NCBI RefSeq assembly: GCF_018977255.1
Contig: NW_024704753.1
Span: 124,001 to 188,000 of the forward strand
DNA: 64,000 nt
Direction: 5' to 3'
From: Callorhinchus milii
Taxonomy: Eukaryota
The first letter of the stretch is position 1. Each line of letters opens with the position of its first letter. This document shows, piece after piece, positions 2,476-33,433 of the stretch. The notes below the pieces were generated by a model. The model saw only the letters and a list, made by a program, of their open reading frames with translations, made no database searches and was not told where the DNA came from. The translations under genes and the position numbers were made by a program.

Positions 2476-2496
2476 AAACAATTTCATGTTTTCAAA

Positions 2497-2526
2497 AATA
2501 AATGCTCCTTCCCCCTCAAAATAAAT
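2497..2526 (+). terminator. SURF6 polyadenylation signals (two AATAAA)
   Basis: AATAAA at 2497-2502 and ~2520-2525, just after the stop at 2475. Repeated in copies B and C. Confidence 0.6.
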
Positions 2527-6785: not shown

Positions 6786-6879
6786 ACAGACTACCAGAGA
6801 GAGACTCTCCCTAAATTAATGCACAATCATGACAGACAGAAAAGTAGCTTTATGTTATCAAATCCAGAACCATATAAAA

Positions 6880-9239: not shown

Positions 9240-9600
9240 CTGACTAATCACAAGATTGGTTTGAACGAAAAACATCCTACGGCTCATCTGATCTCAGCCA
9301 TAACCTTCAATCCTCTCATAACAGCATCAAGCTGCCTTGGAAGCACTCCGGGACACTACCCCACTTGACAGGCTATATTAATGCAAGTTGTTGCTTAAAT
9401 GAGTCCAGTGTCCTGGCCTCAACCGCTCTTGTTGGCAGCCTGTTCCAGTTGTTAATTAACCTCTGAGTAAAGAAAAACTTCCTGGTATCTGACCAGAAAT
9501 TGCTTTACAACTTTAAACCTGTGACTTCTTGTCCTACTGTTTCGATGCATTCTAAAGTATTCTGAGTTTACTTTTTCAATCCCATTTAACATTGTACAGT
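9240..9600 (-). mobile_element. Decayed CR1-type LINE 3' fragment in ITIH intron 3 (also in copies B and C)
   Basis: ggcagcctgttccagttgttaattaacctctgagtaaagaaaaacttcct...tttaaacctgtgacttcttgtcct is a CR1 3' signature in antisense. Confidence 0.55.
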
Positions 9601-11169
9601 ATTTTCTTGACCACTAACAGCGGTGTCCAACCACGAGGTGGCGCTGTCTCACATGATCAACGAGTGAAGAGGCTGGAGCTGTAGAACTGGGTCTTATTGA
9701 GTCAAATCAGATTTCATGCCACTGGAAATAAATATATAAAACTTAATGTTAAGCCTGAGGTAAATATTGCTCATGACTATTGCTTTATTAAGCAAATGCA
9801 GAACACCGCCTAGTACTGATCGATTGATTTGTCTATAGGGTCCTCGCTGAGTCAGCGATTCTCAAGCTTGAAGAGCCCCATCTTATCTAATTGCTGCTCA
9901 TTCCTCCAACACTTGGGATCATCCTCTAAACTGCCTTCAGGCCATTTAATCCACATTCTGCTGACAAATGTGAAAGTCGTCCTGATTGGACCAACTCAGA
10001 TTTTTTGTTTGGTTCAAAGTTTCCTTTGAGGATAATACAAAATGCCATTTGTAGCACATTTCACGTTGGGAGGATGTCCCAAGGCGCTGGACGATAAAGG
10101 AGGAAATGAGAGATGAACCAGCAAAGAGACAGACTGGGGCTGAGAACAATGAATCGGGGATACTGTATACTAATTCTGTGTTCTAATGCTAGGATTATAG
10201 ATGGGGTGGTTTACGTTGGAGTTGTGAAGGAGAAAGAAGTGGCTAAGCAGCAGTACCAGCAAGCAGTCGCACGAGGGCAGACAGCAGGTCTTGTGAAGTA
10301 AGGATCAAAGGGCTTCTTTTCAATCTTCCTCAGTCATTTTGCCTCCTTTCCCCACAAAGACAAGCCTCATGAAGGGATGGGACACAACCTAAATCAGGTC
10401 ACTGATTCCCAGAATGTACTTCTCTCCAGATATTTACCAGTTATAGAATCTTTCCCACAATATTAATGTATGTCTGAACAATTTGATTACATGGGAGAAG
10501 GTGTGACATCTCATTTTAATGGACAAAACTGACTTTTTGGATAAAGCGATCTCAGTGTAGTCTTGCATGTTAACTCACCACTACAAATGTCTAATTCTGT
10601 CTTGATAGGAATTCTCTCAGAAAACTATTTATATGGGAGTTGTTTGTATCAATTTTTGATGAATTAATCATTTAACTGCCATTGAATGTTCATTGAATGT
10701 TCCAAAGACATTCGAGCTTCCTAAAGCATTTATTCTCAAGTAAAAGCTTTTTTTAGTAAAGCAACATTTTAACCTGTGTATGGTTTAAGATATATGCTTC
10801 ACATTTTTCATGAATGATTTAGGTTAGTTAATTACAGACGGGGGCTATTTTACATTTTAAAAAATCTGTTTTATATTCTTCGTGTCCAAAGAGTAACTGG
10901 AAGGAAAATGGAAAAGTTTAAAGTTTCAGTAAATATCGCAGCAGCTAAAAAAGTAACATTTGAGCTGGTTTATGAAGAATTACTCAAGCGTAAACTGGGG
11001 AAATACGAGATGGTGATCAGAGTAAAGCCTGAACAGCTTGTCCAGCATTTCCAGGTATGTAGCAGGGATGGGAGCTAGCCACTGTGGCACTTGTCCAACC
11101 AGGGCCCACTGACTCCTCATGAAGTGCACCTACACAACAACAACAATATCAACAACATGTCCTTGAAAT

Positions 11170-11985
11170 GTGCAGCGCTTGTGGAAATGGTTGTGAAAAA
11201 GCTAATATTATTCAGGGTTTATACATAGGGACATAGAGTACAAATGTAAAGGAATAATAATAATCCTTGCATTTGATATAGTGCCTTATCACGTCTTCTA
11301 GATGTCTCAAAGCGCTTCACAGAATAGACTGTAAAGTGAATTGACTGTATATTTGTGGGTGAAACACTGCAGCCAATTGCACACAGCAGCATCCCACAAA
11401 CAGTCGTGGATTGAAAATAACCAATTTATTATTGTTTTTGTTTTTGGAGGGATTATTATTAGGTGTGTGGAGTCAGGAAACTTGCCCAAGATTTTCCTCT
11501 GCCTGGAATTGAACTCAGGTGTCTCGCTTGCAAAGCGAATGCTCTAACCACTGAGCCACAGGATGCCACAATCCCAGGGATGAGGGGCATTAGTTCTAAA
11601 GAGGGTGAATTAGTTGGGTCTGTTTTTCATTGGCGTAAAGAAGATTGTGAGGCTACCTGATAGAAATGTATATCATTCTGAGGGGTTTTGATGCTAAGTA
11701 ATGGGAAGCTATTGTCATTGGTAGGTTTGTCAGTGAGTAGGGGCCACAGTTATAAGACAATAAAGTTTAGGAGATTTTTTTCACTCAGAATAGTTGGGAT
11801 GTGGAATGCTAGAGGCAGAGTGTGTTCTGGGTTTCAGAGGGAAGTCAACATGTATATGAATGTTAGCGGCTTGAAGGCCTATGGCAACATGGCAAGAGCA
11901 GAGGGAGTGAAAGAACAGCTTCCTCTCAGACTGGGTGCAGAATTGATCGGCCAAAGGCCTGCTTCTGTGCTATGAATTTCTATAA
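11170..11985 (+). mobile_element. CR1-type LINE 3' fragment in ITIH intron 5, interrupted by a SINE (copies ~24340-25155 and ~37515-38330)
   Basis: agggacatagagtacaaa lies before the SINE. After it come gaagattgtgaggctacctgatagaaatgtatatcattctgagggg, tttttcactcagaatagttgggatgtggaatg and ggccaaaggcctgcttctgtgctatgaatttcta. Confidence 0.7.
11253..11567 (-). mobile_element. tRNA(Ala)-derived SINE (copies 24421-24735 and 37597-37911)
   Basis: The minus strand begins ggcatcctgtggctcagtggttagagcattcgctttgcaagcgagacacctgagttcaattccagg (box A and box B) and ends in an (ATT)n tail. Confidence 0.85.
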
Positions 11986-12199
11986 TTGTAAAAAATATTT
12001 TATTTCCTCTGTGCCTATTTTCAAATGTTTAACAAACATGTTAACACTAATTACATTCCATCACATTTCAACCTCTCCAGATTGATGTCCATCTGTTTGA
12101 ACCACAAGGCATTGCCTTTTTGGATGTTAATGCAACATTTTTAACAAATGATTTAATGCCAATTGTGAAAAAGACTCTAACAGGAAAAAAGGTACATTA

Positions 12200-12631
12200 T
12201 TAATAATAATAATAATCTGCATCCTTGCATTTTGTATAGTGCCTTTCATGTTGGGAGGATGTCCCAAAACTCTTCACAGAATTTACTATGAAGTAGAGTG
12301 ATTGTGTATTTGTAGACAAACATAACAGCCAATTGCACAAACAATGATCTGCAAACAGCCATGATTTGAATGACCAATCTTATTTGGGGTATTTTTGGCC
12401 AAGATACTGGGAGAAATCTCTTCTCAAATAGTGCCATAGCACCTTTAACATCCATCTAAACGGGACCTCACTTTAATGTCTCATTCAAAGGACAGCACCT
12501 CCGACAATGCAACACCACCACAGCATTACATTGGAGTGCCAGCTTAAACTATGTGAGTTCAAGTCCCAATGTGGGGCTCAAACCCACAACCTTCTGGCTC
12601 AGAGGCATGAGTGCTGCTAACTGAGTCAGGC
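12200..12631 (-). mobile_element. Deu-domain tRNA SINE (DeuSINE/SacSINE1-like) (copies ~25368-25799 and ~38544-38975)
   Basis: Minus strand has a tRNA-like head (ctgactcagttagcagcactc...ggtttgagcccc), a central gcattgtcggaggtgctgtcctttgaatgagacattaaagtgaggtcccgt...atggcactatttgagaagag resembling the Deu core, and an (ATT)n tail. Confidence 0.7.
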
Positions 12632-13372
12632 TTGACAGACTGTTGTATACTTTGAGGTTTACACATGTGGATATGACAATCTTACCGTGAATTGCTGTGT
12701 GATTCAGGCTCACATTTCCTTCACACCAACACTGGATCAGCAGAGTGCCTGTACCAGTTGCCAGAACACTGGCTTGGATGGAGATTTTATTATGACTTAT
12801 GATGTGGACCGAGACCTGTCGGCTGGGAACATAGCGGTAGGCAACTACAACAACAACAACAAGATTACATTTGTATCATGCCTTTCAAGTCGGGAGTACG
12901 TCCCAAGGCGCTGGGACGTTTAGCTAATTCATTATTACGTTTTGAGTGAAAAGCTGTTAGCATTCATTATTTTAACACTTCTTTTTTCCAGATAGTGAAT
13001 GGATATTTTGTTCATCATTTTGGACCTGCAAATCTACCTAGAGTTCCTAAAAATGTTGTCTTTGTGATTGACCAGAGTGGCTCCATGATGTTTACAAAAA
13101 TGTTCCAGGTAAGGAAGCTGATTATGGGAAGGTTGGTTTCAGTTCCTCAACGTCTCCTTGATCTCATTGTTTGTCCAAAAGAATGCTCATTTGGGTTGAA
13201 GATATTCCCATGAAATGCCAGGAGAAAACGGTCAGTTCTGTATAATCCAAATACAGTCGCTTGTTAACCAGCTGTTTGGCTCTTCAGTGCAGCCAACAGC
13301 CAACAGCTGGCGCCATCCCAGCTGGACAAGTATTGAGCCTCACAGTTTCTGTTAGTTTGACCAAAACTGCAG

Positions 13373-13703
13373 ATAATAATAATAATAATAATAATAATCC
13401 TTGCATTTGATATAGCGCTTTTCACGTCAGGAGGACGTCCCAAAGCGCTTCACAGAACACACTGTAAAGTGAATTGACTGTATATTTGTGGGCGAACGCG
13501 GCAGCCAATTGCGCACAGCAATGTCCCACAAACAGTCGTAGATTGAAAATGACCAATTTAATTATTGTTTTTGGTTTTGGAGGGATTATTATTAGGCTCT
13601 GTGTGGAGTAAGGAAACTTGCCCAAGGTTTCGCCCTGCCTGGAATTGAACTCAGGTCTCTCACTTGCAAAGCGAGTGCTCTAACCACTGAGCTACAGGAC
13701 TCC
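13373..13703 (-). mobile_element. tRNA(Ala)-derived SINE, young subfamily (copy 39716-40044)
   Basis: Minus strand reads ggagtcctgtagctcagtggttagagcactcgctttgcaagtgagagacctgagttcaattccagg with an (ATT)n tail, closely matching 56982-57306. Confidence 0.9.
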
Positions 13704-15273
13704 ACAAAGATAAGAGACAAAGCAAACTATTACCCTGTATCCTCCACCTGAGCAACTCCACACCCACCACTGAAGCTGGTCTATATCTGTTATTGGAGCC
13801 CTGTCTGCACCAGTGCAGCTCAGTGTGCAAGACTGCTGTTAACATTGCAACACTTTCTGCCACCATTACATCGCCAAGTTCCACCAATGCTGCTTCGCAC
13901 TGATCATTAGAAGATGCCTGATATCAGCCTCTTCCTCCAGTTTGTTCCTCCTCACAACGACTGTCAACCCTGTTGTAATGTGTCACTATGTTCTGTGTAT
14001 TTGTAATGTGTGTCTGTGTGGATATGAAACTGCATTTTTTTATTTGGTCATGTATTGTTTTTCGGTGTTTTGTTTCTTACAGACTAAGGAGGCACTTCAC
14101 AAAATTTTAGATGATTTAAATACGGAGGATAATTTTGCATTCATTTCATTTTCTTCGAGTTTTAGAAAATGGAAGAATTCCTTAATCAGAGCAACTACAG
14201 CGAACGTGGTTGAAGCTCATAAATATGTTAGTGAGCTTCACGCCGGTGGAGGTAAAGGAACTCTTCATTACCGTTTTTAAACAAAAACAGAAACTTTATT
14301 ATAGTATAATTTTAAAATTAAAAAACGAATGATGAGCTTTAGAAGTAAGACAAGGGCTTGAGAAAACAACAACTTGCATTTATAATGGGTCCTTCAAATG
14401 GGTAGCATCTCGGAGAGTTTAACAGCGGCAGCTCAGCCAACAGAAAAGAGCAAATTACCTGCTTTTTATCGTATTTTAAATCATGTTGAATTCTCTCAAA
14501 ATGTTTTACAATAATGACTGTCAAGTATTGTGATTATTTTTGTTGCTGGTTTTGCACCGGCAACATCTCACAAATAGTTGATTAATCTTGGGGATTGTTG
14601 GTTAATACACGTGGTGAAACTCGCTTCTCTCTTTCAATTGTGAACTGGGATTTGACAGTGTGTGGTGTGGGTGTTTGGTGTGGGTGGCAGTGTGTGGTGT
14701 GGACAGTGTCAGCGAACTCTCCCCACACCCCCTCCAGTTCCTGCTTATTCTTAAACTTAAATTGAAAGCTTGAAAAGTCAGCTAAGAGTTGATTTTTTTG
14801 TCCGTAATGAGAGAATTTTTCTTTTGTTTCAGGAACGAACATAAATGACCCTCTGTTGGAAGCAGCAAAACTTCTGGATGACGCTCACAATCTGGGGCAG
14901 GTACCCGAGAGAAGCGTCTCCATGATCATTCTGCTGACTGATGGCGACCCCAATTCGGGTGAGCAAAGCTCAATGTCATTCTGCGGTACCGTATGTCCTT
15001 TCACTCTTGGAAAAACTCCATCCTCCACTCACTGAGCACTCACCCTAATACATAGGAAATAACGTGCTCTGATCAACGGGAAATAGGCATTTTTATTAAA
15101 TGGATAGTTCTAATTTTTTTATTATTTTATTGCAGGAGAATCCAATCCCACCAAGATCCAATCCAATGTTAAATATGCCATCAATAACAAGTACAACTTG
15201 TACTGTCTGGGATTTGGTTACGATGTTAAATACAGTTTTCTCGAAAAAATGTCCATAGAAAATAGCGGCATAG

Positions 15274-15613
15274 GTAAGATAGAAGAACTGAAGAGCAAAG
15301 ATGAAGATAAAGCAAAGGAAATTGAGACAAAAATGAAATGGACTAATGCTCTTTACAGAGCTGAGGGTGTGAAGATCAAAGACAATGAAGAAATGTTGAA
15401 AATCGCATTAAAAAGAAAGGAGAAGCTGAAGGCCCAGCGCCAGAAGAATTGGAGAAACGAACTGAGCAAGTGGTGGAGAAGATGCAACATCGTCAGAACA
15501 AGAGGCAGAGAAACCTAAAGAAAAAGAAACTGGCCAAGATAGAGAGGAAAAAGGATAAGGCGAGAAAGAAGGGCCGTGTTCTGCCAGAAGACATCAAAAA
15601 AGCACAACTTTAA
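15274..15613 (+). pseudogene. SURF6: SURF6 last-exon 3' fragment with a 1-bp frameshift
   Basis: Reads KIEELKSKDEDKAKEIE..., and has aattggagaa where the other copies have aattgggagaa (~15451). Confidence 0.9.
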
Positions 15614-17697
15614 AAACAATTTCATGTTTTCAAAAATAAATGCTCCTTCCCCCTCAAAATAAATTCACCGGTCTTTTATCATAATGTATAATGTTTGTAA
15701 TTTTTTTAAACCATCTGCAATGTACATTTGTAATCTTATCTTCACTTATGATATGAAACACCAGATCATTACAATTAACTCAGATTTAATAACTGTAACA
15801 AAAGATCACAGTGTAATAAGGAAACAAAGGAACAGGAGTAGGCCATTCAGCCACTCAAGCCTGTTCAGCCATTTTATATCACGGCTGACCTATGACTCAA
15901 CTCCATTGTGCATTTCATGCTGAGCTGTGTTTCCCACCAGGAGGCTCACAGGGAGTTCCTGGTACCCACCTAGAGAGGTTCAAATCCATACTTGTTATAT
16001 CAAATGGCCAGTTCGTGATTATCCTCCTTTGGGGCAGGTGAGTGGGGTCTCCTTGGAGCTGAACTACCTCCAAGGCGACATGTTTGGCAACGGAATATCA
16101 GAGCCATACCTTTCTGGTGGTCTTTAGTCCAGTTCCTGAGGCAGGCAGTTGTGCAGTACCCCAGGGCACTAATGGTGACAGGCCAGTCATCCTGGCACAT
16201 CGGCAGGGCAAATTGGTTATTGGGGGCAGGGAATCCTCACACTCAGCTCCCATTAATCCTGCAACCCAAAGCCCTAACGGCTAGGGTTGTCATAACTGAC
16301 AAGCAAGGGAAAACTTGCCAGACAATGCTCTCAATGGTAAGCTAGGCAGTTCAGAGCACAAAAGGAGACCATTCGGTCCATCATGTCTGTGCCGGCTCTT
16401 TGAAAAGAGCTATCCAAATCAATCCTACTCTCCTCTCTCCCCATAACCCTACAAACTTGTCCTCCACAAATAATTATCTACAGTTTTAGCTGGTTAGATT
16501 CCAGCAGTTACCCCCAACACATACTCTAGATGCTAAGCTTTGGCTCTTGCCAACCCATGCCTAATAACTTCCAGAGTTAGGTAAGTGGAATCCATCCCAC
16601 CAGGGAGAGTGATTATGGCATTCCAATAATGCAACAAGCATTCATTTCATGTGTGGGTGGGATGTAGGGAATACTGTTTGGTTTGGATACTCTTAAAAAT
16701 GGTGATCAGTTTCCACGTGTGTCAGACACTTGGCTAACCAAACACAGCTTTGAGAAGTGGTTTGAGACATCTTCCTGAAGTGAAAGATGCTACATAAATG
16801 AAAATTGTTTTTTGCTGAAGGGCACCTGTGACCATGTACTGTACAAATGCCTGCAGAAGAGAATCAATTTTTAGAGAAAAGTTGAGAAACAAAACATGTG
16901 AAAGTAACATTTGCAAATAGTAGATATCACAAGGCTGATCAGAATGTTTTTGGCTCCCATTCACCTTGGAGTCATTTTATATGTACAAATATCAAGGTTT
17001 GAACTTGCAATCAGTGCAGGGCCACAGTACAGCTGTGTTTTACTAATACAGAATGATGCAACACTGATCTGTTTACTCACCAGAAAATGATTCAGGAGAT
17101 AAAATAATTTCTTACATTGTCAATCGTATCTCATGAACAACTGTTGAAATGATCTTTTTGCCAGTTAGAACTTGTTTTGTTGAGAACATGGAACTAATTT
17201 AATCATTAGAAGTGCATGACCTTTATTAATATTTGCCACACATTACTTATTACGCATTGAAATTGCCATTGGCTTTACATAGACTGTTGAATAATTGTTT
17301 CTGTAATCTTTCTGGATTTTTGCAAAGGTGTTTTGGTGGACAGCATCAAACAGCAAACGGGATGCAGTTACTGGTGACTAAATAGTAAGTGGTGGTGTGG
17401 GTGCCCTACTATCTACTGCCAGTCCCAACTTCTCTATAATCTCCAATGGATTCTCATCCCATGGTGACTATGGTGTACTCAAGCTCTCCCCTGTTATCAT
17501 CTGCAGGCATATGGGTCAATATCCATATTTAAAATGAAATCTCCACTTTGATTGCAAAGAACATAGTCAGATTTATCAAGTCAACAGATCCAAGATACAT
17601 GGAATTCAGTGAAGCAAGATAATAAGCTTTGGATATAAGAATAGTGGACAGCAACCTATTCTAAATGGAAAACATTGAGAATTAGGGCACATAAGTC

Positions 17698-19930
17698 ATT
17701 ACAACAACAACAACTTGCACTTATATAGTGCCCTCCACGCTTGGTGGCATCTCAGAGCTTAACAATGGTGGAGCCCAAGGCTGAGCCAGGGGGAGGGGAA
17801 GGTGACCATAGGCACGGTCAAAAAGTCTTCAGGTGCGACTTGAATATGGGGAAGGAGGGGGCAAGGCGACAGGGTTGAGGGAGGGAGTTCCACAGTTTTG
17901 GGGCGTAATGGCTGAAGGGACGGCCACCGATGGTGGAGCGAAGGATTCGGGGGACACGGAGGAGACTGGACCCAGTAGAGCAGAGGCAGCGGATACTGCT
18001 GTGGGGAGAGAGGTTAGAGAGATGGGGGTGGGGGGGGGGGGGGCAAGGAATGGAAGGAATTAAACACTATAGTGAGGATCTTGAAGTGGATCCGCTCTGT
18101 GACAGGAGCCAGTGGGGTTTGGCCAGGACTGGAGTAATTGGAATACGGAGTTTGGTGCGGGTGAGAATGCGGGCGGCGAAATTTTACACAAGCTGAATTT
18201 TGGAGGAGGGGAGACTGGCGAGGAGGGCGTTAGAATCGACTCGCCGAGAGGTGACAAAGGCATGGACAAGGGTTTTGGCAGCTTTTGGGGTGAGGTATTG
18301 TCGGAGATGGGCAATGTGGCAGAGGTGCAAGAAAGCAGTGCTGGTCAGGGACCGGACATGGGGGAGGAAGAATAACTGGGGATCAAACCTAATGACTAAG
18401 TTGCGCATGGGTTCAGAGAGTTTTAAGAACAGGTCGGGTAGATTGAGGAGGTCGGAACCATGGGACAGAAGATGTTGGCAGGAGCCAAAGGGTATGGCTT
18501 CCGTCTTGTGGATGATTAACTGGAGGAAATTTGCGCTCATCCAGACAAGCTGACAGAACATCAGGATACTGAGGGTCGCAGCTGGAGATGGAAAAGTAGA
18601 GTTGAGCGTCATCCACATCCATGTGGAAGTTAACCCTGTGTCTGCAGATGACAACACTGAGAGGGAGCATATAGATGAGGAAGAGAAGGGGACCAAGAAT
18701 GGATCCTTGGGTATCTACCCCACAGGTGACCGGGTGAAAGTGCGAAGAAAAGCCATTTGCAGAAATGTGCTGGTGGTTTATAAGGTAGGATTCGAACCAA
18801 GTGAATGCGGTCCCACTGAGCTATGATGGAGGACAGGCGTTGCACGAGGATGGCGTGATCAACTGTGTTGAACGCGATGGAGAGGACCAGGAGGACAAGA
18901 AGGCAGAGGAAGCCCTGGTCACAGATAGATTTGTGGCCTTCACAAGCGCGGACTCTGTACTGTGGGCAGCCAAGGCAGAAACTGGACTGGAGGAGTTCGA
19001 GTAGGGTGTGGAGGGAGAGATGTGCACAAAGTTGGAAGGCAACAACGCCATTCCAGAGCGTTGGAAAGAAAGGCAGGTTTGAGATAGGGCGAGAGTGGCC
19101 GAGGTTGGAGGGATCGAGGGTAGTTTTTTTTTAAGGAGTGGGGTGATGATTGCAGTTTTGAGAGCGAGTGGGACTGATCCTGAGGAGAGAGACTGGTTAT
19201 AGTGTCTGCCAGCAGTGGGCAGAGGAGGGGGAGCTGAGTGATCAGCAATTGGGTGGGGAGGGAGTCGAGGCAGCAGGTGGTGGGTTTCATTGTGGATGAA
19301 AGATAGGAAGGAGAGATGGGGGCAAATGAATGTAGGATAGGGGCGTGGTAGGACCTGAGGGCAGGGTGGGTGAGGGAGATCTAATGGGGGGGCGGGGGGG
19401 GGGGGGGTGTGGTTGGTGACACAGGACAGAGGGATGAAGCTGCCAGGTGGATGTTGACAACATTAGAGGTAAGGAAGCCCATGACCTCTTCGCGCTTGGT
19501 GTTAGATGTGATGATTGAGGGAGCGCACGGAGGAGGTGGTAGGGGTTGGAGAATAGGACTGGGGAGTTACTGTTGACCTCCAGTATGATGTTTGAGTCGT
19601 GCGCAGTTTTTGCTTGTGACAGGGAGCAGTGGTAGGTGTGAAGATGCTCGAGCCACAGCTGGTGGTGAACCGTTAGGCTGGATTTCTGCCACCTGCACTC
19701 AAGCAACCAGGTTTGGGATTTTAGGGAGCGGAGATGGCTGTTGTACCAGGGGGTTCAGGTGGGTTTGGAGACAGTCCTGGATTTCAGGGGGACGAGGGAG
19801 TTCAAGATGGAGGAGAGGCGATCATGGAGCAGCTTGACGGCTGCTTCAGGGTTGCTGCAGGTAGAAGGCCAGAGGGATAGGAGGATTAATAGCTGCAAAG
19901 AGCTGCAGCATGTTCACCTCTCCCCAATTT
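17698..19930 (-). mobile_element. L2-clade LINE remnant, copy B
   Basis: Duplicate of 4565-6785 with the same RT fragments. Confidence 0.88.
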
Positions 19931-20257
19931 GAACAGACTACCAGAGAGAGACTCTCCCTAAATTAATGCACAATCATGACAGACAGAAAAGTAGCTTTAT
20001 GTTATCAAATCCAGAACCATATAAAATTGTTGTCAAAACATTCATTGATTTATTGATACAAATATTAACTATTTTACAAGCAATGCGACCCCTTTGTCTG
20101 AGCAACTCCTGACCAGCAGCATTACTTGTTTTAAAATTTGCTGAAACCGTGGATCAATGGTTAGATCAATATTTTGCGAAACTAGAACTATTACTCAACA
20201 GTGCTGGATTATAAACTGGTTCCTGAAGCAGAACTTCACAGCCTCACAGTTCCCACC

Positions 20258-23200
20258 ATGAAAGCAATTCTGCCCTGGGTTTTGCTGACTTCTATTCCAG
20301 CCTTAATATCTGCTGATTTCATCATAGCAGATTTAAAGCACCAAAAGGTAAAGCGCTATTCATTTCCAATTTTTTAGTGATTTTTCAATTAACTAAATTA
20401 TCTTTTAAACTTATTTTTCAATTTGAGCAGAGTAAATCCACAGTCCATTCAGCAAATGCCCAGAGCCCATGGAGAAGGACGTTAAAGATACTAGCCAAAT
20501 TTATCTGAAGATATTTTGAGTTAGATAATTAGTCCGAAAGATAATTAAGTACAAATTGAAAAGTTAAAGTGTACAAATTTATCACATCTCTGCTGTTTTT
20601 CTATTAGGAATTAGATTGCGTGTTTTGGGCTAAACTGCAGGGATTTCTGCCTTGATGATTCATCAGTTTTGTTTGTATATCTTAAGATATTTCTTACTCT
20701 GTTGCCTAACTGATAAATGTTCCAGTTTCCTTCAGTCTTCAATAAGAAACAGACAGGTGATTGAAGCCTGAACTACAGTTATATTGCTTCTTTATTTTGA
20801 ACTTGATACGTTCTCTGAGCTGGGTACTGACCATTGGGCTCATGTGCTGCAGAATGTGACCTAGAAAATAGTACCTGAAATGACAAGCCTTCAGTCTACA
20901 TTCACTGCTATTTTCTTGCTGTTTTAAAAATAATAATAATAATAATCCTTGCATTTGATATAGCACTTTTAATGTCTTCAAGATGTCTCAAAAAAATCAT
21001 AGAAATGCAGCCAAGAAGGAGGTGTTTGGCACAGATTCCCAGAGTGAGCTGTCCATTCAGACACACTGCATTGGCTCCCCTTCAAGTTGCTATCTTTCAT
21101 GTACCTTTCTACATCCCCTCAATACTCCCTCTGCCACTTTCCTTGGCGGGGGATTCTACAAGTGAAAAAGGTTCTCCTAAACACTCTTTTCACTCTTTTT
21201 GTGTCTATCTTATATCTGTGTCCCATATCACCAAATTCCCCACCAGTGGAAACAGCTTCTCTCTATTTACCACTCATCATTGTATTTACCTCCATCAGAT
21301 CCCCACTCAACCTTCTCTGCTCCAATTAAACAGACCCAAATTCTCCGATCTCCTCATTATCACAGCCCCTCATTCAGGGGAATCATTTCCTAAAATTGTA
21401 TGTCCAATTCAACTTTTTCTAATTTTTCCCCCAAATAACATATGTCTCTGCTCCTGGTCCTTCCCTCCTCTTGCTGGCGTCCAGTTCTACAGGCACCTGT
21501 TTACCTCTTTTTTATTAATGAGTTGGATTATTGAGCTCTGCTGCCTGTATCTGCCCATTGCAGTACAGTTACCAATGCGAACCTGAAGTCCATCAGTCAG
21601 GTCTTTGTTAGAAATTGATTTATTTTGTGCACTGTCTAATTATACAGCACAATCTTATCAACATTATGAATAACTGTATGAATAACTGATGTTCTTTTTC
21701 CCTTGTTGGAAATAGAAAAGAAGCGTCGATGGGCACCCCACTAAAGTAGGTCTAATTCCTGATATTGCTGCTCTGTAATGGTTCTGTGTAGTGTAACTGA
21801 CTTTAACCTAAGTTGTGCCACAGATTCGAAAAAACGTTGCAATTTTGATGATGTAACTGTTCAGTTTGGATATTTCTAATTTCAACAATAAGCAGAATGT
21901 CTCTGTGTTTGTTCAGTCTGTACTGGAACTGAAAATAACCCCCACTTAATATCAATTTACTATATGTATTTACATCGGACTTCTCTGGACATTATTAAGT
22001 GTTAAATATAATTTCTTGCACATAAAAACATAATCCTTGCATCCGATATAGCACCTTATCACATCGATGAAATGTTTCAAAGTGCTTTGCAGGATTTACT
22101 GTTGAATATAGTGAATGATTTTTTGGCGAATACTGGCATACATTAGTGTTCATATTATCTTTATTTTTCAGCAAGTGAAGGAGCTTGAAATTTACAGTTT
22201 TAAGGTTGATTGCAAAATTACATCTCGATTCGCTCGCAATGTGGTGACCAGTCGGGTAGTGAACCGAGCGAATGAGTCCAAAGAAGCTTTGTTTGATGTA
22301 CAGCTGCCCAAAACAGCCTTCATTGCCAACTTCAGCATGTGTGTATTTGCTCTGTTACTTGAGATAATTTGTGTGTAAATAGAACAGTGAACTTTGTGAC
22401 AAACTCCCTGACTAATCACAAGATTGGTTTGAACGAAAAACATCCTACGGCTCATCTGATCTCAGCCATAACCTTCAATCCTCTCATAACAGCATCAAGC
22501 TGCCTTGGAAGCACTCCGGGACACTACCCCACTTGACAGGCTATATTAATGCAAGTTGTTGCTTAAATGAGTCCAGTGTCCTGGCCTCAACCGCTCTTGT
22601 TGGCAGCCTGTTCCAGTTGTTAATTAACCTCTGAGTAAAGAAAAACTTCCTGGTATCTGACCAGAAATTGCTTTACAACTTTAAACCTGTGACTTCTTGT
22701 CCTACTGTTTCGATGCATTCTAAAGTATTCTGAGTTTACTTTTTCAATCCCATTTAACATTGTACAGTATTTTCTTGACCACTAACAGCGGTGTCCAACC
22801 ACGAGGTGGCGCTGTCTCACATGATCAACGAGTGAAGAGGCTGGAGCTGTAGAACTGGGTCTTATTGAGTCAAATCAGATTTCATGCCACTGGAAATAAA
22901 TATATAAAACTTAATGTTAAGCCTGAGGTAAATATTGCTCATGACTATTGCTTTATTAAGCAAATGCAGAACACCGCCTAGTACTGATCGATTGATTTGT
23001 CTATAGGGTCCTCGCTGAGTCAGCGATTCTCAAGCTTGAAGAGCCCCATCTTATCTAATTGCTGCTCATTCCTCCAACACTTGGGATCATCCTCTAAACT
23101 GCCTTCAGGCCATTTAATCCACATTCTGCTGACAAATGTGAAAGTCGTCCTGATTGGACCAACTCAGATTTTTTGTTTGGTTCAAAGTTTCCTTTGAGGA

Positions 23201-25941
23201 TAATACAAAATGCCATTTGTAGCACATTTCACGTTGGGAGGATGTCCCAAGGCGCTGGACGATAAAGGAGGAAATGAGAGATGAACCAGCAAAGAGACAG
23301 ACTGGGGCTGAGAACAATGAATCGGGGATACTGTATACTAATTCTGTGTTCTAATGCTAGGATTATAGATGGGGTGGTTTACGTTGGAGTTGTGAAGGAG
23401 AAAGAAGTGGCTAAGCAGCAGTACCAGCAAGCAGTCGCACGAGGGCAGACAGCAGGTCTTGTGAAGTAAGGATCAAAGGGCTTCTTTTCAATCTTCCTCA
23501 GTCATTTTGCCTCCTTTCCCCACAAAGACAAGCCTCATGAAGGGATGGGACACAACCTAAATCAGGTCACTGATTCCCAGAATGTACTTCTCTCCAGATA
23601 TTTACCAGTTATAGAATCTTTCCCACAATATTAATGTATGTCTGAACAATTTGATTACATGGGAGAAGGTGTGACATCTCATTTTAATGGACAAAACTGA
23701 CTTTTTGGATAAAGCGATCTCAGTGTAGTCTTGCATGTTAACTCACCACTACAAATGTCTAATTCTGTCTTGATAGGAATTCTCTCAGAAAACTATTTAT
23801 ATGGGAGTTGTTTGTATCAATTTTTGATGAATTAATCATTTAACTGCCATTGAATGTTCATTGAATGTTCCAAAGACATTCGAGCTTCCTAAAGCATTTA
23901 TTCTCAAGTAAAAGCTTTTTTTAGTAAAGCAACATTTTAACCTGTGTATGGTTTAAGATATATGCTTCACATTTTTCATGAATGATTTAGGTTAGTTAAT
24001 TACAGACGGGGGCTATTTTACATTTTAAAAAATCTGTTTTATATTCTTCGTGTCCAAAGAGTAACTGGAAGGAAAATGGAAAAGTTTAAAGTTTCAGTAA
24101 ATATCGCAGCAGCTAAAAAAGTAACATTTGAGCTGGTTTATGAAGAATTACTCAAGCGTAAACTGGGGAAATACGAGATGGTGATCAGAGTAAAGCCTGA
24201 ACAGCTTGTCCAGCATTTCCAGGTATGTAGCAGGGATGGGAGCTAGCCACTGTGGCACTTGTCCAACCAGGGCCCACTGACTCCTCATGAAGTGCACCTA
24301 CACAACAACAACAATATCAACAACATGTCCTTGAAATGTGCAGCGCTTGTGGAAATGGTTGTGAAAAAGCTAATATTATTCAGGGTTTATACATAGGGAC
24401 ATAGAGTACAAATGTAAAGGAATAATAATAATCCTTGCATTTGATATAGTGCCTTATCACGTCTTCTAGATGTCTCAAAGCGCTTCACAGAATAGACTGT
24501 AAAGTGAATTGACTGTATATTTGTGGGTGAAACACTGCAGCCAATTGCACACAGCAGCATCCCACAAACAGTCGTGGATTGAAAATAACCAATTTATTAT
24601 TGTTTTTGTTTTTGGAGGGATTATTATTAGGTGTGTGGAGTCAGGAAACTTGCCCAAGATTTTCCTCTGCCTGGAATTGAACTCAGGTGTCTCGCTTGCA
24701 AAGCGAATGCTCTAACCACTGAGCCACAGGATGCCACAATCCCAGGGATGAGGGGCATTAGTTCTAAAGAGGGTGAATTAGTTGGGTCTGTTTTTCATTG
24801 GCGTAAAGAAGATTGTGAGGCTACCTGATAGAAATGTATATCATTCTGAGGGGTTTTGATGCTAAGTAATGGGAAGCTATTGTCATTGGTAGGTTTGTCA
24901 GTGAGTAGGGGCCACAGTTATAAGACAATAAAGTTTAGGAGATTTTTTTCACTCAGAATAGTTGGGATGTGGAATGCTAGAGGCAGAGTGTGTTCTGGGT
25001 TTCAGAGGGAAGTCAACATGTATATGAATGTTAGCGGCTTGAAGGCCTATGGCAACATGGCAAGAGCAGAGGGAGTGAAAGAACAGCTTCCTCTCAGACT
25101 GGGTGCAGAATTGATCGGCCAAAGGCCTGCTTCTGTGCTATGAATTTCTATAATTGTAAAAAATATTTTATTTCCTCTGTGCCTATTTTCAAATGTTTAA
25201 CAAACATGTTAACACTAATTACATTCCATCACATTTCAACCTCTCCAGATTGATGTCCATCTGTTTGAACCACAAGGCATTGCCTTTTTGGATGTTAATG
25301 CAACATTTTTAACAAATGATTTAATGCCAATTGTGAAAAAGACTCTAACAGGAAAAAAGGTACATTATTAATAATAATAATAATCTGCATCCTTGCATTT
25401 TGTATAGTGCCTTTCATGTTGGGAGGATGTCCCAAAACTCTTCACAGAATTTACTATGAAGTAGAGTGATTGTGTATTTGTAGACAAACATAACAGCCAA
25501 TTGCACAAACAATGATCTGCAAACAGCCATGATTTGAATGACCAATCTTATTTGGGGTATTTTTGGCCAAGATACTGGGAGAAATCTCTTCTCAAATAGT
25601 GCCATAGCACCTTTAACATCCATCTAAACGGGACCTCACTTTAATGTCTCATTCAAAGGACAGCACCTCCGACAATGCAACACCACCACAGCATTACATT
25701 GGAGTGCCAGCTTAAACTATGTGAGTTCAAGTCCCAATGTGGGGCTCAAACCCACAACCTTCTGGCTCAGAGGCATGAGTGCTGCTAACTGAGTCAGGCT
25801 TGACAGACTGTTGTATACTTTGAGGTTTACACATGTGGATATGACAATCTTACCGTGAATTGCTGTGTGATTCAGGCTCACATTTCCTTCACACCAACAC
25901 TGGATCAGCAGAGTGCCTGTACCAGTTGCCAGAACACTGGC
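20258..25941 (+). pseudogene. ITIH3: 3'-truncated ITIH3-like copy B: exons 20258-20347, 21716-21745, 22172-22338, 23361-23465, 24060-24222, 25249-25359, 25876-25941 (cut)
   Basis: Matches exons 1-6 and part of exon 7. The sequence switches to the GC-rich SURF6 promoter after ...CQNTG. Confidence 0.85.
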
Positions 25942-26290
25942 CCTCACGGCCCGGTTCGCGTATGTGCAGTGTACGTCATCAGTCAGCGCCGAAAGGCCCA
26001 CGTGCAACTGCAGCCGAGAAGCCGAGCGCGACCCCCGACCCCGACCCGCCGCACCCCCCGACCCCGGGCCGCCGCACCCCCCCGGACCCCCGGGCCGCCG
26101 CACCCCCCGACCCCGGGCCGCCGCCTGTGTCCTGTGAACATCGTCCCGTTTCCTGTTTGAAGCCTCTGAGAGTTGGTTATCGCTGACACAATGGCGGACC
26201 TGAGTCTCGCCGCTAAAGACAAGTACCTACAGCGTCTGGGAAGCAAAGTGTGCGCCGCTCAGCGCCAGGAGCCACACCAGCGAAAACTTG
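25942..26290 (+). promoter_or_regulatory. CpG island / TATA-less promoter of SURF6, with a short GC-rich tandem repeat (cccccgaccccgggccgccgca, about 3 copies, 26030-26125) and a CRE-like TACGTCA
   Basis: Very high GC and CpG density directly upstream of and overlapping the SURF6 ATG at 26191. Confidence 0.75.
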
Positions 26291-28780
26291 GGTAAACATT
26301 GTTGCAGAACCCTATTTCCCAGAGGATTGACTGAGTTTCTGGTGAAACTGGTTCTGGATATTAGATTTCAGTGAATTTGGACAGTGATGTTACAGTAAAG
26401 AAGATATAGAGATTGGCCGAAAGTATTAATACATGAGATTTGGTTTGTGTTGAAGTTCATGTTACAGAACTGTATAATATCTTTCTAGAAATGCTATCTT
26501 CAGGATTTTTTAAAATATTTGAACATTATAAATATGTAAAATTATTTACATTTGATATATCACCTGTATTTTTTAAATGTCTCAAATTTATGTATGTTTT
26601 CTGACTATCCAGTGCCTTGGAAGCCATTTGCAGTTTTACGTCCACCTTAAAAAAAACACTCAAATATTTGTGAAATTAGCATAGATTGTTTCCAGTTAAA
26701 TATAAATTGTTTAAAAAGCTCACAACCAGAGGAATTACCTGAAGTTATACCTTAAAGTGGCTGCTGATTACTAATCAGAAATCATCGCTTTGACCCTGTG
26801 TTGGTGTGTGAACGCCCCCCAAAATTTTTTTTATGTAATTTCTTTAAAATTACAAGTTTCCAGAAAGATGGGCACTGAGGAGAGTCATCAACTTAAAAAG
26901 AAAAAAAGAAAGAAGCAGCCTCTGAAGGAACAGAGAGGTTTTCAGGCAGTGAGAGTCGATCTGTCTAAACCTGCTCAGGTGGGAATAAAAGAAAATCAAA
27001 ATTTCAGAGGTGAGAAAATTAAAGGTGAAACATGCATGTTAAAATCCACTTGAGATGTTTATATTTATTTCACAAGTTAAGTACTTCAATTGAGTGCTCT
27101 TGCTTTCTCGTCTTCTCTTGCCTGTTGATAGTGACAGTGTTGTAGAAGTGGATTCCACTCCTGGAAATGTGAATTAATAACACCTGAAAATTTAGAAGGA
27201 ATTTACTTTTCTCAAAAGTTAATTGAAAAAGAAATCCAAGAAAATATACAGCAAATTTCAAACAGATTATTTTTGTATAAATGAGATTTAAAGACGGACC
27301 CTGAAATGTTATTAATGAGCAAAACCTATTTGTAGACTGTGCCCTCCTTCCCCCCACACCCCACTCTCCCCGATCCTGATCCCCAGCTCAGGTCCAAAAC
27401 ACTAATTGTCCAGCACCTTAGGACGTCCTCCCGATGTGAAAGGCGCTATACAATGTAATTTTGTTGTTGTGGAGAGATGCTGAGTTGGTCATATATCCTT
27501 TCTATTCTGCAGTTATTTATTGCAGAACTGACTAATTTTACTTATTATCTGGAAATAATACATGTATTTTTAGAGCTCAGTGTTAGTAAGGTATAAAATG
27601 AATTGTCATTTGCAACTTGTGTAAATAGTGCAGTTAAAAAAATTGAAAACTTCATTCATGTAACTGGGACAATTTATAGTGTATTATTTTATGTCACTAC
27701 AATGGCTTAATAATAAAAAAATCTTTCAATTGATATAGCTTATTATGTGGTTGAAACATCTCAAAATGCTCACAGGCTTTACAGTAAAATAAGTGACTTT
27801 GTATTTATGAGGTTAAGACTGAGCTACGACTGTAGCATTATTATTGCGACAGTTGACCTCTTCTTTTCTCTCACAGTTAGCAAAACAGAATTGGGCTCCT
27901 TCTCAGCGGTAAATCTTCTTCGCCAGAGATTGCATGACAAAATTGAAGAATCCCGTGGACAGGTGAATTCAAAAAATTATGTTTCTGTGAGAAGCAAAGC
28001 AATGTCTTCTTTCCAGTCGCTGCGTTAGTCGTATTGCATCTTGCCTTTTTTGAAAAAAATCAACATAGAATATATACTTTTTTTGAATAGGTCAACCAGA
28101 GAGGCTTGTCATCTGAAGAATTAAAGAAGTTACGTCTGCGTAGAAAACAGGAACGGGAAAGAAAAAAACGAAAACGAAAAGAATTGCGGATAAAGAAAGA
28201 ACAGGAGACATTGCCTCAGGAAGAGTGTGTGGCATCAGACACTCAAAAAGGAGAGACAACGCAGGAGTGCAGGAAAGTGGAGGAGCAAATAATCTTCAAT
28301 AAAATTGAAGTATCATCTCAAGTAGTCAATAATAAAATACTGAAGAAAAAAGAGAAAAAAGGAAAGATTAAAGGTGGTGTCACACCCTTGACTGGTAAAA
28401 ACTACAAACAGCTGTTGTCCAGGCTAGAAGCTCGGAAGAGTAAGATAGAAGAACTGAAGAGCAAAGATGAAGATAAAGCAAAGGAAATTGAGACAAAAAT
28501 GAAATGGACTAATGCTCTTTACAGAGCTGAGGGTGTGAAGATCAAAGACAATGAAGAAATGTTGAAAATCGCATTAAAAAGAAAGGAGAAGCTGAAGGCC
28601 CAGCGCCAGAAGAATTGGGAGAAACGAACTGAGCAAGTGGTGGAGAAGATGCAACATCGTCAGAACAAGAGGCAGAGAAACCTAAAGAAAAAGAAACTGG
28701 CCAAGATAGAGAGGAAAAAGGATAAGGCGAGAAAGAAGGGCCGTGTTCTGCCAGAAGACATCAAAAAAGCACAACTTTAA
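26191..28780 (+). CDS. SURF6: Surfeit locus protein 6, complete copy; exons 26191-26291, 26864-27009, 27877-27962, 28091-28780 (~340 aa)
   Basis: N-terminus MADLSLAAKDKYLQRLGSKVC resembles the vertebrate SURF6 N-terminus. Intron phases 2/1/0 are consistent, and the C-terminal SURF6 domain is intact. Confidence 0.93.
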
Positions 28781-30869
28781 AAACAATTTCATGTTTTCAA
28801 AAATAAATGCTCCTTCCCCCTCAAAATAAATTCACCGGTCTTTTATCATAATGTATAATGTTTGTAATTTTTTTTAAACCATCTGCAATGTACATTTGTA
28901 ATCTTATCTTCACTTATGATATGAAACACCAGATCATTACAATTAACTCAGATTTAATAACTGTAACAAAAGATCACAGTGTAATAAGGAAACAAAGGAA
29001 CAGGAGTAGGCCATTCAGCCACTCAAGCCTGTTCAGCCATTTTATATCACGGCTGACCTATGACTCAACTCCATTGTGCATTTCATGCTGAGCTGTGTTT
29101 CCCACCAGGAGGCTCACAGGGAGTTCCTGGTACCCACCTAGAGAGGTTCAAATCCATACTTGTTATATCAAATGGCCAGTTCGTGATTATCCTCCTTTGG
29201 GGCAGGTGAGTGGGGTCTCCTTGGAGCTGAACTACCTCCAAGGCGACATGTTTGGCAACGGAATATCAGAGCCATACCTTTCTGGTGGTCTTTAGTCCAG
29301 TTCCTGAGGCAGGCAGTTGTGCAGTACCCCAGGGCACTAATGGTGACAGGCCAGTCATCCTGGCACATCGGCAGGGCAAATTGGTTATTGGGGGCAGGGA
29401 ATCCTCACACTCAGCTCCCATTAATCCTGCAACCCAAAGCCCTAACGGCTAGGGTTGTCATAACTGGACAAGCAAGGGAAAACTTGCCAGACAATGCTCT
29501 CAATGGTAAGCTAGGCAGTTCAGAGCACAAAAGGAGACCATTCGGTCCATCATGTCTGTGCCGGCTCTTTGAAAAGAGCTATCCAAATCAATCCTACTCT
29601 CTCTCCCCATAACCCTACAAACTTGTCCTCCACAAATAATTATCTACAGTTTTAGCTGGTTAGATTCCAGCAGTTACCCCCAACACATACTCTAGATGCT
29701 AAGCTTTGGCTCTTGCCAACCCATGCCTAATAACTTCCAGAGTTAGGTAAGTGGAATCCATCCCACCAGGGAGAGTGATTATGGCATTCCAATAATGCAA
29801 CAAGCATTCATTTCATGTGTGGGTGGGATGTAGGGAATACTGTTTGGTTTGGATACTCTTAAAAATGGTGATCAGTTTCCACGTGTGTCAGACACTTGGC
29901 TAACCAAACACAGCTTTGAGAAGTGGTTTGAGACATCTTCCTGAAGTGAAAGATGCTACATAAATGAAAATTGTTTTTTGCTGAAGGGCACCTGTGACCA
30001 TGTACTGTACAAATGCCTGCAGAAGAGAATCAATTTTTAGAGAAAAGTTGAGAAACAAAACATGTGAAAGTAACATTTGCAAATAGTAGATATCACAAGG
30101 CTGATCAGAATGTTTTTGGCTCCCATTCACCTTGGAGTCATTTTATATGTACAAATATCAAGGTTTGAACTTGCAATCAGTGCAGGGCCACAGTACAGCT
30201 GTGTTTTACTAATACAGAATGATGCAACACTGATCTGTTTACTCACCAGAAAATGATTCAGGAGATAAAATAATTTCTTACATTGTCAATCGTATCTCAT
30301 GAACAACTGTTGAAATGATCTTTTGCCAGTTAGAACTTGTTTTGTTGAGAACATGGAACTAATTTAATCATTAGAAGTGCATGACCTTTATTAATATTTG
30401 CCACACATTACTTATTACGCATTGAAATTGCCATTGGCTTTACATAGACTGTTGAATAATTGTTTCTGTAATCTTTCTGGATTTTTGCAAAGGTGTTTTG
30501 GTGGACAGCATCAAACAGCAAACGGGATGCAGTTACTGGTGACTAAATAGTAAGTGGTGGTGTGGGTGCCCTACTATCTACTGCCAGTCCCAACTTCTCT
30601 ATAATCTCCAATGGATTCTCATCCCATGGTGACTATGGTGTACTCAAGCTCTCCCCTGTTATCATCTGCAGGCATATGGGTCAATATCCATATTTACCAA
30701 ATGAAATTGATCTCCACTTTGATTGCAAAGAACATAGTCAGATTTATCAAGTCAACAGATCCAAGATACATGGAATTCAGTGAAGCAAGATAATAAGCTT
30801 TGGATATAAGAATAGTGGACAGCAACCTATTCTAAATGGAAAACATTGAGAATTAGGGCACATAAGTCA

Positions 30870-33110: not shown

Positions 33111-33433
33111 AGACTACCAGAGAGAGACTCTCCCTAAATTAATGCACAATCATGACAGACAGAAAAGTAGCTTTATGTTATCAAATCCAGAACCATATAA
33201 AATTGTTGTCAAAACATTCATTGATTTATTGATACAAATATTAACTATTTTACAAGCAATGCGACCCCTTTGTCTGAGCAACTCCTGACCAGCAGCATTA
33301 CTTGTTTTAAAATTTGCTGAAACCGTGGATCAATGGTTAGATCAATATTTTGCGAAACTAGAACTATTACTCAACAGTGCTGGATTATAAACTGGTTCCT
33401 GAAGCAGAACTTCACAGCCTCACAGTTCCCACC

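What the first reader, a model, noticed from the sequence alone, without database searches (positions are those of the whole stretch)
12774..28439. Triplication has Y-Z-X | Z | Y-Z-X geometry with both flanks about 2,500 bp: signature of a false gap-fill, or an unusual real rearrangement
Seen: the middle copy (15274-25941) contains only core Z (=2135-12773). The part of copy A beyond Z (X, 12774-15273) is 2,500 bp. The part of copy C before Z (Y, ~25942-28439) is about 2,498 bp. Both junctions therefore jump back by essentially the same distance (13,139 bp in copy A coordinates). Two independent natural breakpoints are unlikely to do that. Inference: two overlapping contig ends (...YZX and YZX...) were scaffolded with a gap, 2.5-kb flanks were mapped to a read or contig in reversed order, and the sequence between them (Z) was pasted in. 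That would make the extra SURF6 and the two partial ITIH copies false duplications. If real, this would be a very recent complex tandem amplification of SURF6 plus the ITIH 5' half.
Basis: partly seen in the sequence, partly recalled or inferred. Interest (0 to 1): 0.8.

Follow-up and report, generated by a model that had tools for sequence, protein, structure and literature searches.

The report
False triplication from gap filling
The apparent triple copy of the SURF6 and ITIH gene region in this elephant-shark sequence is almost certainly an assembly error, so the extra gene copies and the fused exon at the join should not be taken as biology.

Summary
The geometry is real in the sequence. 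Copy A (1-15273) and copy C (26308-41617) are 99.4% alike. The middle copy B (15274-25941) holds only core Z. The flanks are X = 2,500 bp and Y = 2,498 bp, and both joins jump back 13,139 bp.

The evidence points to an artefact:
- Flanks this alike arise by chance about 3 in 10,000 times.
- Join J1 is blunt, with no shared bases.
- B carries copy C's variants plus private 1-4 bp indels that look like long-read errors. A differs by haplotype-like variants.
- In Logan contigs of 4 of 4 other individuals of the species, the contig over X stops matching exactly at 15273 and runs on 94-1,795 letters. In 3 of 4, the contig over the start of Z begins matching exactly at 15274, with 268-999 other letters before it. 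None of the 32 listed pieces bridges J1.
- All five B-private indels in the laid stretch read as the A=C state in those runs. Two A/C differences appear as one state per individual, as alleles would.

J2, read depth and the reference animal's own reads were not tested. I put an artefact of any kind at about 0.93, the gap-filler route at about 0.8 and a real private triplication at about 0.05.

The parts
1..2134 (+). Y, copy A (cut by the window start; about 366 bp more lie before position 1). Holds SURF6 exons from codon 34 and the first part of its last exon.
   Evidence: Matches 26308-28439 with 2 one-base indels. tblastn of P0001.
2135..12773 (+). Z, copy A: second half of the SURF6 last exon (SURF6 ORF 1801-2472), intergenic repeats, and ITIH 5' exons including VIT (8947-9207). 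Haplotype-like differences from B and C.
12774..15273 (+). X, copy A: exactly 2,500 bp with further ITIH exons (read by me as the vWA part; Pfam gave no hit). It ends in mid-exon. I infer it is the last 2.5 kb of the left contig, used as an anchor.
   Evidence: Its three private 1-base deletions (14462, 14792, 15021) read as the copy-C state in 4 of 4 runs.
15273..15274 (.). Join J1 (end of X to start of Z). Blunt, no shared bases. It fuses an ITIH exon in frame to the middle of the SURF6 last exon.
   Evidence: contexts; ORF 15198-15518; contig matches stop at 15273 in 4 of 4 runs and start at 15274 in 3 of 4, and 0 of 32 listed pieces bridge it.
15274..25941 (+). Z, copy B: I infer this is the pasted gap fill. 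It has copy C's haplotype plus 8 private 1-4 bp indels. Its SURF6 fragment (codons 230-342) is frameshifted at 15450.
   Evidence: B-private indels at 15450, 15700, 17155 and 17531 read as the A=C state in 4 of 4 runs, and the one at 17538 in 3 of 4.
25941..25942 (.). Join J2 (end of Z, in the middle of an ITIH exon, to the start of Y, 249 bp before the SURF6 start codon). Not tested with reads.
25942..28439 (+). Y, copy C: 2,498 bp. I infer it is the first 2.5 kb of the right contig, used as an anchor. Holds SURF6 exon 1 (26191-26289), the following exons and the first part of the last exon.
28440..39117 (+). Z, copy C.
   Evidence: only 3 private differences.
39118..41617 (+). X, copy C: 2,500 bp. 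It continues without a break into unique sequence.
41618..52000 (+). V: unique continuation of the ITIH gene. The exon cut at J1 reads on here. ITI_HC_C lies at 51692-51895. The end coordinate is approximate.

Best explanation
The locus is single-copy in the animal: W - Y - Z - X - V, that is, one SURF6 gene followed by one ITIH gene and then a NEK-type kinase gene. In the long-read assembly, two contigs overlapped by the whole Y-Z-X stretch (about 15.7 kb, roughly one long read) but were not merged. They probably represent the two haplotypes. The left contig ended at 15273 and the right contig began at 25942. A scaffolder placed them end to end with a gap. A gap-closing step then took about 2,500 bases on each side of the gap (X on the left, Y on the right) and found both on a long read, or a read consensus, of the true locus. 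There they lie in the order Y...X, and the step pasted in the sequence between them, Z. The result is Y-Z-X | Z | Y-Z-X. Shown here: the geometry, the blunt joins, the error profile of the middle copy, the absence of J1 in four other individuals, and the allele-like behaviour of A/C differences. Inferred: the contig ends, the scaffolding gap and the anchor-based fill. The program is not identified. The confidence of 0.8 is for this whole route; an artefact of any kind is about 0.93.
For: (1) X = 2,500 bp and Y = 2,498 bp (2,500 in copy-A coordinates if the unseen 366 bp are of equal length). Both jumps are 13,139 bp. The chance of flanks alike within 2 bp is 3.3e-4.

(2) Joins are blunt. At J1 neither side shares a base with the native neighbour. 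The breakpoints lie inside exons at arbitrary places.

(3) Three-way alignment of Z gave 53 difference events. Of the 33 A-private events, 27 are substitution events, most in a cluster at 4806-5028, and 6 are indels, including ones of 19, 17 and 3 bp. Of the 14 B-private events, 8 are indels of 1-4 bp and 6 are 'substitution' events, 4 of which lie in one 10-bp shifted patch. C has 3 private events, and 3 differ in all copies. So B is copy C's haplotype plus small indels of the kind left in long-read-derived sequence.

(4) laid contigs of 4 samples from one study, same species label. At 15273, 4 of 4 runs have a contig whose match ends exactly there while the contig goes on for 1,795, 1,512, 94 and 389 letters. 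At 15274, 3 of 4 have a contig whose match starts exactly there, with 999, 268 and 588 letters before it. The fourth contig simply starts at 15291. None of the 32 listed pieces bridges J1. A contig that runs unbranched through the end of X argues for a single successor there.

(5) In one search, B-private indels at 15450, 15700, 17155 and 17531 read as the A=C state in 4 of 4 runs, and 17538 in 3 of 4. A-private deletions at 14462, 14792 and 15021 read as the C state in 4 of 4.

(6) The A/C substitutions at 13789 and 14002 appear as one state per run: the C state in X11 and the A state in X10, X12 and X13. That is how alleles of one locus behave, not fixed paralogue differences.

(7) Context. 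The window is Callorhinchus milii or a very close relative (99% to the named SURF6 of that species; the next best hits are 75-77%). A table in PMC12952989 (passages) lists that species' chromosome-level assembly as PacBio CLR, Falcon, Chicago plus Hi-C, HiRise. False duplications at contig boundaries about one read long, with a gap between the copies, are a described failure of such assemblies (PMC8081667 and PMC9516828, passages).
Against: - The four runs are other individuals. X10's contig carries three letters found in neither A nor C (14481, 14670, 15066), so the reference animal's own DNA was not tested.
- Only J1 was laid. J2 was not.
- Only 32 of about 235,700 laid pieces were listed, and the loose-end letters at 15273/15274 were not among the rows shown. 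A short bridging contig could therefore be hidden, and I could not read that the contigs run on into V and Y.
- Contigs give no usable copy number. Listed unique-looking contigs have word depths of about 6-14 over both X and Z, which shows no 2:3 step but is noisy.
- Y is 2,498 bp, not 2,500, in copy-C coordinates.
- No gap-closing program is shown to use 2,500-base anchors or to ignore anchor order.
- That the window comes from that particular assembly is not shown.
Confidence: 0.8

Rival explanations
1. An artefact by another route. A separate short contig or haplotig equal to Z was placed by the scaffolder between the two overlapping contigs and the gaps were then removed. Or the assembler's own graph made the extra pass through Z.
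For: This shares all the evidence that the structure is false. Unremoved haplotype pieces in FALCON assemblies are reported by the assembly's authors for the companion lamprey genome (PMC8302630, passage).
Against: A free-standing contig would have no reason to begin and end 2,498 and 2,500 bp inside the duplicated unit. No N run remains at either join.
Confidence: 0.13
2. A real complex triplication private to, or rare outside, the assembled individual. It would have been made by two template switches during replication, or by exchange between homologues, and it would give a second SURF6 gene, two truncated ITIH copies and an ITIH::SURF6 fusion exon.
For: The sequence is contiguous with no N at the joins. 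The fusion at J1 is in frame. The four runs tested are other animals, so a private variant is not excluded. Copies drawn from two haplotypes could explain the A-versus-C differences.
Against: Equal, round 2,500-bp flanks are unexpected for four independent natural breakpoints. There is no microhomology at J1. J1 is absent in 4 of 4 individuals, with unbranched contigs through both of its sides. The middle copy's private changes are nearly all small indels, one of which breaks the SURF6 frame. None of the five that lie in the laid stretch is seen in any run.
Confidence: 0.05
3. An older, fixed segmental duplication of the species, collapsed in the short-read contigs.
For: Contigs built from short reads do collapse near-identical repeats, so their silence on copy number is expected (tool caveats).
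Against: A fixed duplication would make a branch at the end of X (on to Z or on to V) and at the start of Z. Yet contigs of 4 of 4 runs pass the end of X unbranched for up to 1,795 letters. A/C differences appear as a single state per individual. The geometry argument also applies.
Confidence: 0.01

Closest known systems
[quoted passage not shown] 2021, PMC8081667; Ko et al. 2022, PMC9516828; passages read)
   Same: Two near-identical adjacent copies on one scaffold, about one long read in length (15.7 kb). Their differences look allelic. They occur in a PacBio CLR / FALCON-type assembly, and they create false gene gains (a second SURF6, partial ITIH copies).
   Different: Those papers describe a gap, or a read-depth gap, between the two copies. 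Here the gap is closed by a third, partial copy whose ends lie 2.5 kb inside the unit. That turns a false duplication into an apparent triplication with two chimeric joins. I did not find this Y-Z-X | Z | Y-Z-X form in the passages I read. I made no search aimed at it, so I make no claim that it is not in print.
Complex genomic rearrangements by replication template switching (the FoSTeS/MMBIR type, including duplication-triplication structures). Named from my own knowledge; no paper read here.
   Same: These can give a segment present three times between duplicated flanks, with two novel joins.
   Different: The described human duplication-triplication-duplication structures usually have the middle copy inverted, and joins often show microhomology (recalled). 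Here all copies are direct, J1 has no shared base, the flanks are equal and round, and J1 is absent from four individuals.

Membership tests
False duplication at a contig boundary (assembly artefact) | Near-identical copies adjacent on the same scaffold | tested here: met
   A and C are 99.38% alike over 15.3 kb and lie 26.3 kb apart.
False duplication at a contig boundary (assembly artefact) | The join between the copies is an assembly gap or lacks read support | tested here: met
   No N gap remains. However, J1 has no bridging piece among the 32 listed, and contig matches stop or start exactly at it in 4 of 4 and 3 of 4 runs. J2 was not tested. The runs are other individuals.
False duplication at a contig boundary (assembly artefact) | Read depth at haploid level per copy (summed about 1x) | tested here: inconclusive
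   Only contigs were available. The tool states that depth is no copy number. The listed unique contigs show word depths of about 6-14 over both X and Z.
False duplication at a contig boundary (assembly artefact) | Differences between the copies are allelic (haplotype-specific) | tested here: met
   Positions 13789 and 14002 show one state per individual: the C state in X11 and the A state in the other three runs. The A-private events are haplotype-like. Only 2 sites were informative. 15103 shows both states in all 4 runs and remains unexplained.
Anchor-based gap fill placed in the wrong order (the proposed route) | The inserted piece is bounded by fixed-length anchors taken from the two gap edges | tested here: met
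   X = 2,500 bp and Y = 2,498 bp. P = 3.3e-4 for flanks alike within 2 bp.
Anchor-based gap fill placed in the wrong order (the proposed route) | The inserted piece has the error profile of read-derived sequence | tested here: met
   B has 8 private indels of 1-4 bp in 10.7 kb, against 2 indels in C. The five that lie in the laid stretch read as the A=C state in the runs.
Anchor-based gap fill placed in the wrong order (the proposed route) | Assembly records show contig ends and a closed gap at these places | not testable with these tools
   No AGP or component record is on hand. The methods are in Supplementary Note 1 of PMC8302630, which was closed.
Real tandem or complex triplication | The novel joins exist in genomic DNA | tested here: not met
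   J1 was not found in 4 of 4 individuals, and contigs pass both of its sides unbranched. The assembled animal itself was not tested.
Real tandem or complex triplication | Copy number of 3 over Z and 2 over X and Y | not testable with these tools
   No raw-read runs were offered. Contigs give no copy number.

The most novel reading that the evidence does not exclude
The structure is real in the assembled elephant shark: a private direct triplication made by two template switches. It would yield a second intact SURF6, two truncated ITIH copies and an in-frame ITIH::SURF6 fusion exon, and the equal 2.5-kb flanks would be a coincidence.
Probability: 0.05. Interest if true: 0.4.

Novelty: not a real feature. 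Interest (0 to 1): 0.1.

Why it matters
It matters as a warning rather than as biology. About 26 kb of this window (two of the three copies) should be discounted. That includes the second SURF6 gene, the two truncated ITIH copies and the in-frame ITIH::SURF6 exon at J1, which was noted separately on this window (s1-904572). Gene-family counts, synteny maps and annotation built on this assembly would otherwise record false gene gains.

The Y-Z-X | Z | Y-Z-X pattern with about 2.5-kb flanks is also a simple signature that a program could search for. A note on another piece of the same genome describes an 'ABC-B-ABC' structure (s1-906028, untested here). If that one has the same flanks, the error is systematic and could be cleaned across the whole assembly.

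Tried and rejected
- Simple tandem array of period 13,139 bp: rejected. X plus 13,139 lands on Y, which is unrelated sequence, so the region is not periodic, and the two joins have different breakpoints.
- Two independent duplications (Z-X and Y-Z) later recombined: rejected. It needs two events of the same length.
- Microhomology at the joins: none at J1. For J2 only the right-hand side can be compared in the window, and it shares no base.
- Identifying the gap-closing program: failed.
  - From memory only, one MaSuRCA gap-closing script has a default of 2,500 bases for the match required on each side of a gap. No call verified this.
  - One search found 8 papers naming that script and listed 5. 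I read none of them, and nothing links the script to this assembly.
  - The assembly paper's methods are in Supplementary Note 1 (PMC8302630, passages only), which was closed. Those supplements may name the gap-closing step.
- Looking for the same geometry elsewhere in the genome through earlier notes: only a title turned up (s1-906028), with no coordinates or flank sizes. One search found nothing.
- Depth as a copy-number test: not usable, because all the runs were contigs.
- The loose-end letters at 15273/15274 were not among the rows shown. I therefore could not read that the contigs run on into V and Y.
- Site 15103 shows both states in all 4 runs. It does not fit the simple one-state-per-individual picture, and I leave it unexplained.
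- Pfam gave no hit for 4 of the 10 ORF pieces (12687-12920, 12995-13210, 13942-14277, 42628-42858). Calling these ITIH vWA-region exons is my reading of their motifs, not a tool result.
Full report
**Observation.** The window has 64,000 bases, with two N runs only, at 46610-46870 and 47094-47312. Self-megablast gives three long direct matches:
- 1-15273 with 26308-41617: 99.38%, 36 mismatches, 59 gap positions.
- 2135-12773 with 15274-25941: 99.13%.
- 15274-25941 with 28440-39117: 99.75%, 3 mismatches, 24 gap positions.

So the layout is copy A = (Y)-Z-X, ending at 15273; copy B = Z alone; copy C = Y-Z-X, from 25942 to 41617. X is 2,500 bp in both A and C. Y is 2,498 bp in C. Z is 10,639, 10,668 and 10,678 bp in A, B and C. 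The first 366 bp of Y (25942-26307) have their copy-A twin before the window's start. With breakpoints placed uniformly in a 15.7-kb unit, flanks alike within 2 bp occur with P = 3.3e-4, and both within 2 bp of 2,500 with P = 2e-7.

**Gene content.** Pfam (6 of 10 ORF pieces gave hits) finds:
- the SURF6 domain in 1801-2472;
- VIT in 8947-9207;
- ITI_HC_C in 51692-51895;
- protein kinase in 55228-55593 and 57322-57696;
- in the ORF across J1 (15198-15515), only SURF6 profile positions 105-163.

The SURF6 ORF is 99% identical to the UniProt-named SURF6 of Callorhinchus milii (P0001, 342 aa). The next best hits, from other cartilaginous fishes, are 75-77%. The window is therefore the elephant shark or a very close relative, as earlier notes of this scan say.

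A tblastn of P0001 against the window shows a complete SURF6 in copy C: exon 1 at 26191-26289 and the last exon ending at 28777. Copy A has the same gene minus exon 1, only because the window starts too late. Copy B has codons 230-342 alone, split over two frames at 15450. So the middle copy carries a gene fragment, not an 'extra SURF6'. J1 lies inside an ITIH exon and inside the SURF6 last exon. J2 lies inside another ITIH exon and 249 bp before the SURF6 start codon. After copy C the cut ITIH exon simply reads on.

**The joins.** J1 shares no base with either native neighbour. For J2 only the right-hand side can be compared inside the window, and it shares none.

**The copies compared.** A three-way alignment of Z has 53 difference events.

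| Copy | Private events | Kind |
|---|---|---|
| A | 33 | 27 substitution events, most clustered at 4806-5028, plus 6 indels including 19, 17 and 3 bp |
| B | 14 | 8 indels of 1-4 bp, plus 6 'substitution' events, 4 of them in one shifted 10-bp patch |
| C | 3 | 2 indels, 1 substitution |
| Differ in all three | 3 | - |

B therefore has copy C's haplotype plus small indels typical of read-derived sequence. A looks like a different haplotype. In X, A and C differ at 11 events. In the visible part of Y they differ at 2. Newly made natural copies would start identical. The A-versus-C pattern is not that of a very recent amplification.

**Independent DNA.** The look-up of sequencing runs listed 19 runs. 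Four of them (X10-X13: four samples, one study, same species label, Logan contigs) hold 76-83% of the sampled words. I laid them on 12300-18270, which spans J1.
- At 15273, 4 of 4 runs have a contig whose match ends exactly there while the contig continues for 1,795 (X10), 1,512 (X11), 94 (X12) and 389 (X13) letters.
- At 15274, 3 of 4 runs have a contig whose match begins exactly there, with 999 (X10), 268 (X11) and 588 (X13) letters before it. The X12 contig just starts at 15291.
- None of the 32 listed pieces bridges J1.
- Contigs built from short reads break at branch points. A contig passing unbranched through the end of X therefore argues that X has a single successor in these animals, and that successor is not Z.
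- The B-private indels within the stretch read as the A=C state in 4 of 4 runs (15450, 15700, 17155, 17531) or 3 of 4 (17538).
- The three A-private one-base deletions in X (14462, 14792, 15021) read as the C state in 4 of 4.
- The A/C substitutions at 13789 and 14002 appear as a single state per run: the C state in X11 and the A state in the other three. That fits alleles of one locus.

**Limits of this test.**
- Only 32 of about 235,700 laid pieces are listed.
- The loose-end rows for 15273/15274 were not shown, so the continuing letters were not read.
- Depth from contigs is not copy number.
- Site 15103 shows both states in all four runs and is unexplained.
- X10's contig has three letters found in neither A nor C. 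These are therefore other animals, and the reference individual itself was not tested.

**Mechanism.** The locus is single-copy. Two long-read contigs overlapped over Y-Z-X (15.7 kb, about one read) and were not merged, probably because they represent the two haplotypes. They were scaffolded with a gap. A gap closer then used about 2,500-base anchors from the gap edges (X and Y), found both on a read of the true locus in the order Y...X, and pasted in what lay between them. That reproduces every boundary. The geometry, the error profile and the absence of J1 are shown. The contig ends, the gap and the anchor step are inferred. The program is unknown.

**Context from papers.**
- A table in PMC12952989 (passages) lists the species' chromosome-level assembly as PacBio CLR, Falcon, Dovetail Chicago and Hi-C, HiRise.
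- PMC8302630 (passages) gives 68-fold PacBio coverage and refers the methods to a supplementary note that I could not open. It also reports unremoved FALCON haplotype scaffolds in the companion lamprey assembly.
- PMC9516828 (passages) lists gaps between duplicated pairs on one scaffold as a hallmark, and false gene gains as the result.

That the window comes from that particular assembly is not shown.

**Rivals.**
- Another artefact route, a separate Z contig placed between the two (0.13). It does not explain the 2.5-kb flanks.
- A real triplication private to the assembled animal (0.05). It is not excluded by the four other animals, but it needs the flank coincidence, blunt joins and an indel-only mutation profile in the middle copy.
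- A fixed duplication collapsed in short-read contigs (0.01). It is contradicted by the unbranched contigs and by the single state per individual.

**Verdict.** This is not a real feature. It is a known class of assembly error, a false duplication at a contig boundary, in a less familiar form in which the gap was filled by a third partial copy. Biological interest is low. Its practical value is as a searchable signature. A note on another piece of this genome reports an 'ABC-B-ABC' structure (s1-906028), which should be checked for the same flanks.

Noticed in passing
window 15198-15518: The in-frame ITIH::SURF6 ORF across J1, noted separately as s1-904572, sits on a join absent from the contigs of 4 of 4 other individuals. 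It is best read as a by-product of the assembly error.
   Followed up: yes
window 4806-5028 (= 17941-18160 = 31111-31331): 27 substitution events private to copy A are packed into about 220 bp of G-rich sequence. In the laid copy this patch lies in bins with word depths in the thousands, so it sits inside a high-copy repeat. It could be a real allele, a gene conversion or a consensus error near a contig end.
   Followed up: partly
window 13365-13707: A 343-bp piece inside an ITIH intron has word depths in the millions in all four runs, and contigs skip over it. It is a very high-copy short interspersed repeat of this genome.
   Followed up: no
window 46477-46609 and 47313-47452, beside the N runs: The two N runs lie in GT-rich minisatellite-like sequence. 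The stretch just before the first run is 85.5% like the stretch just after the second. This may be another small unmerged overlap at a gap. I filled in nothing and looked up nothing.
   Followed up: partly
window 53690-54225: A G/T-rich tandem array with self-matches at offsets of 56, 77, 99 and 135 bp, 86-88% alike, lying between the ITIH gene and the kinase gene.
   Followed up: no
window 15103: This A/C difference (G/A) shows both states in all four runs, unlike 13789 and 14002. It may be a common heterozygous site or an overlap of contigs. It remains unexplained.
   Followed up: no
another piece of the same genome (note s1-906028): An 'ABC-B-ABC duplication/triplication' at RNF34/KDM2B is reported by title only. 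It has the same geometry as here and could be a second product of the same assembly step.
   Followed up: no
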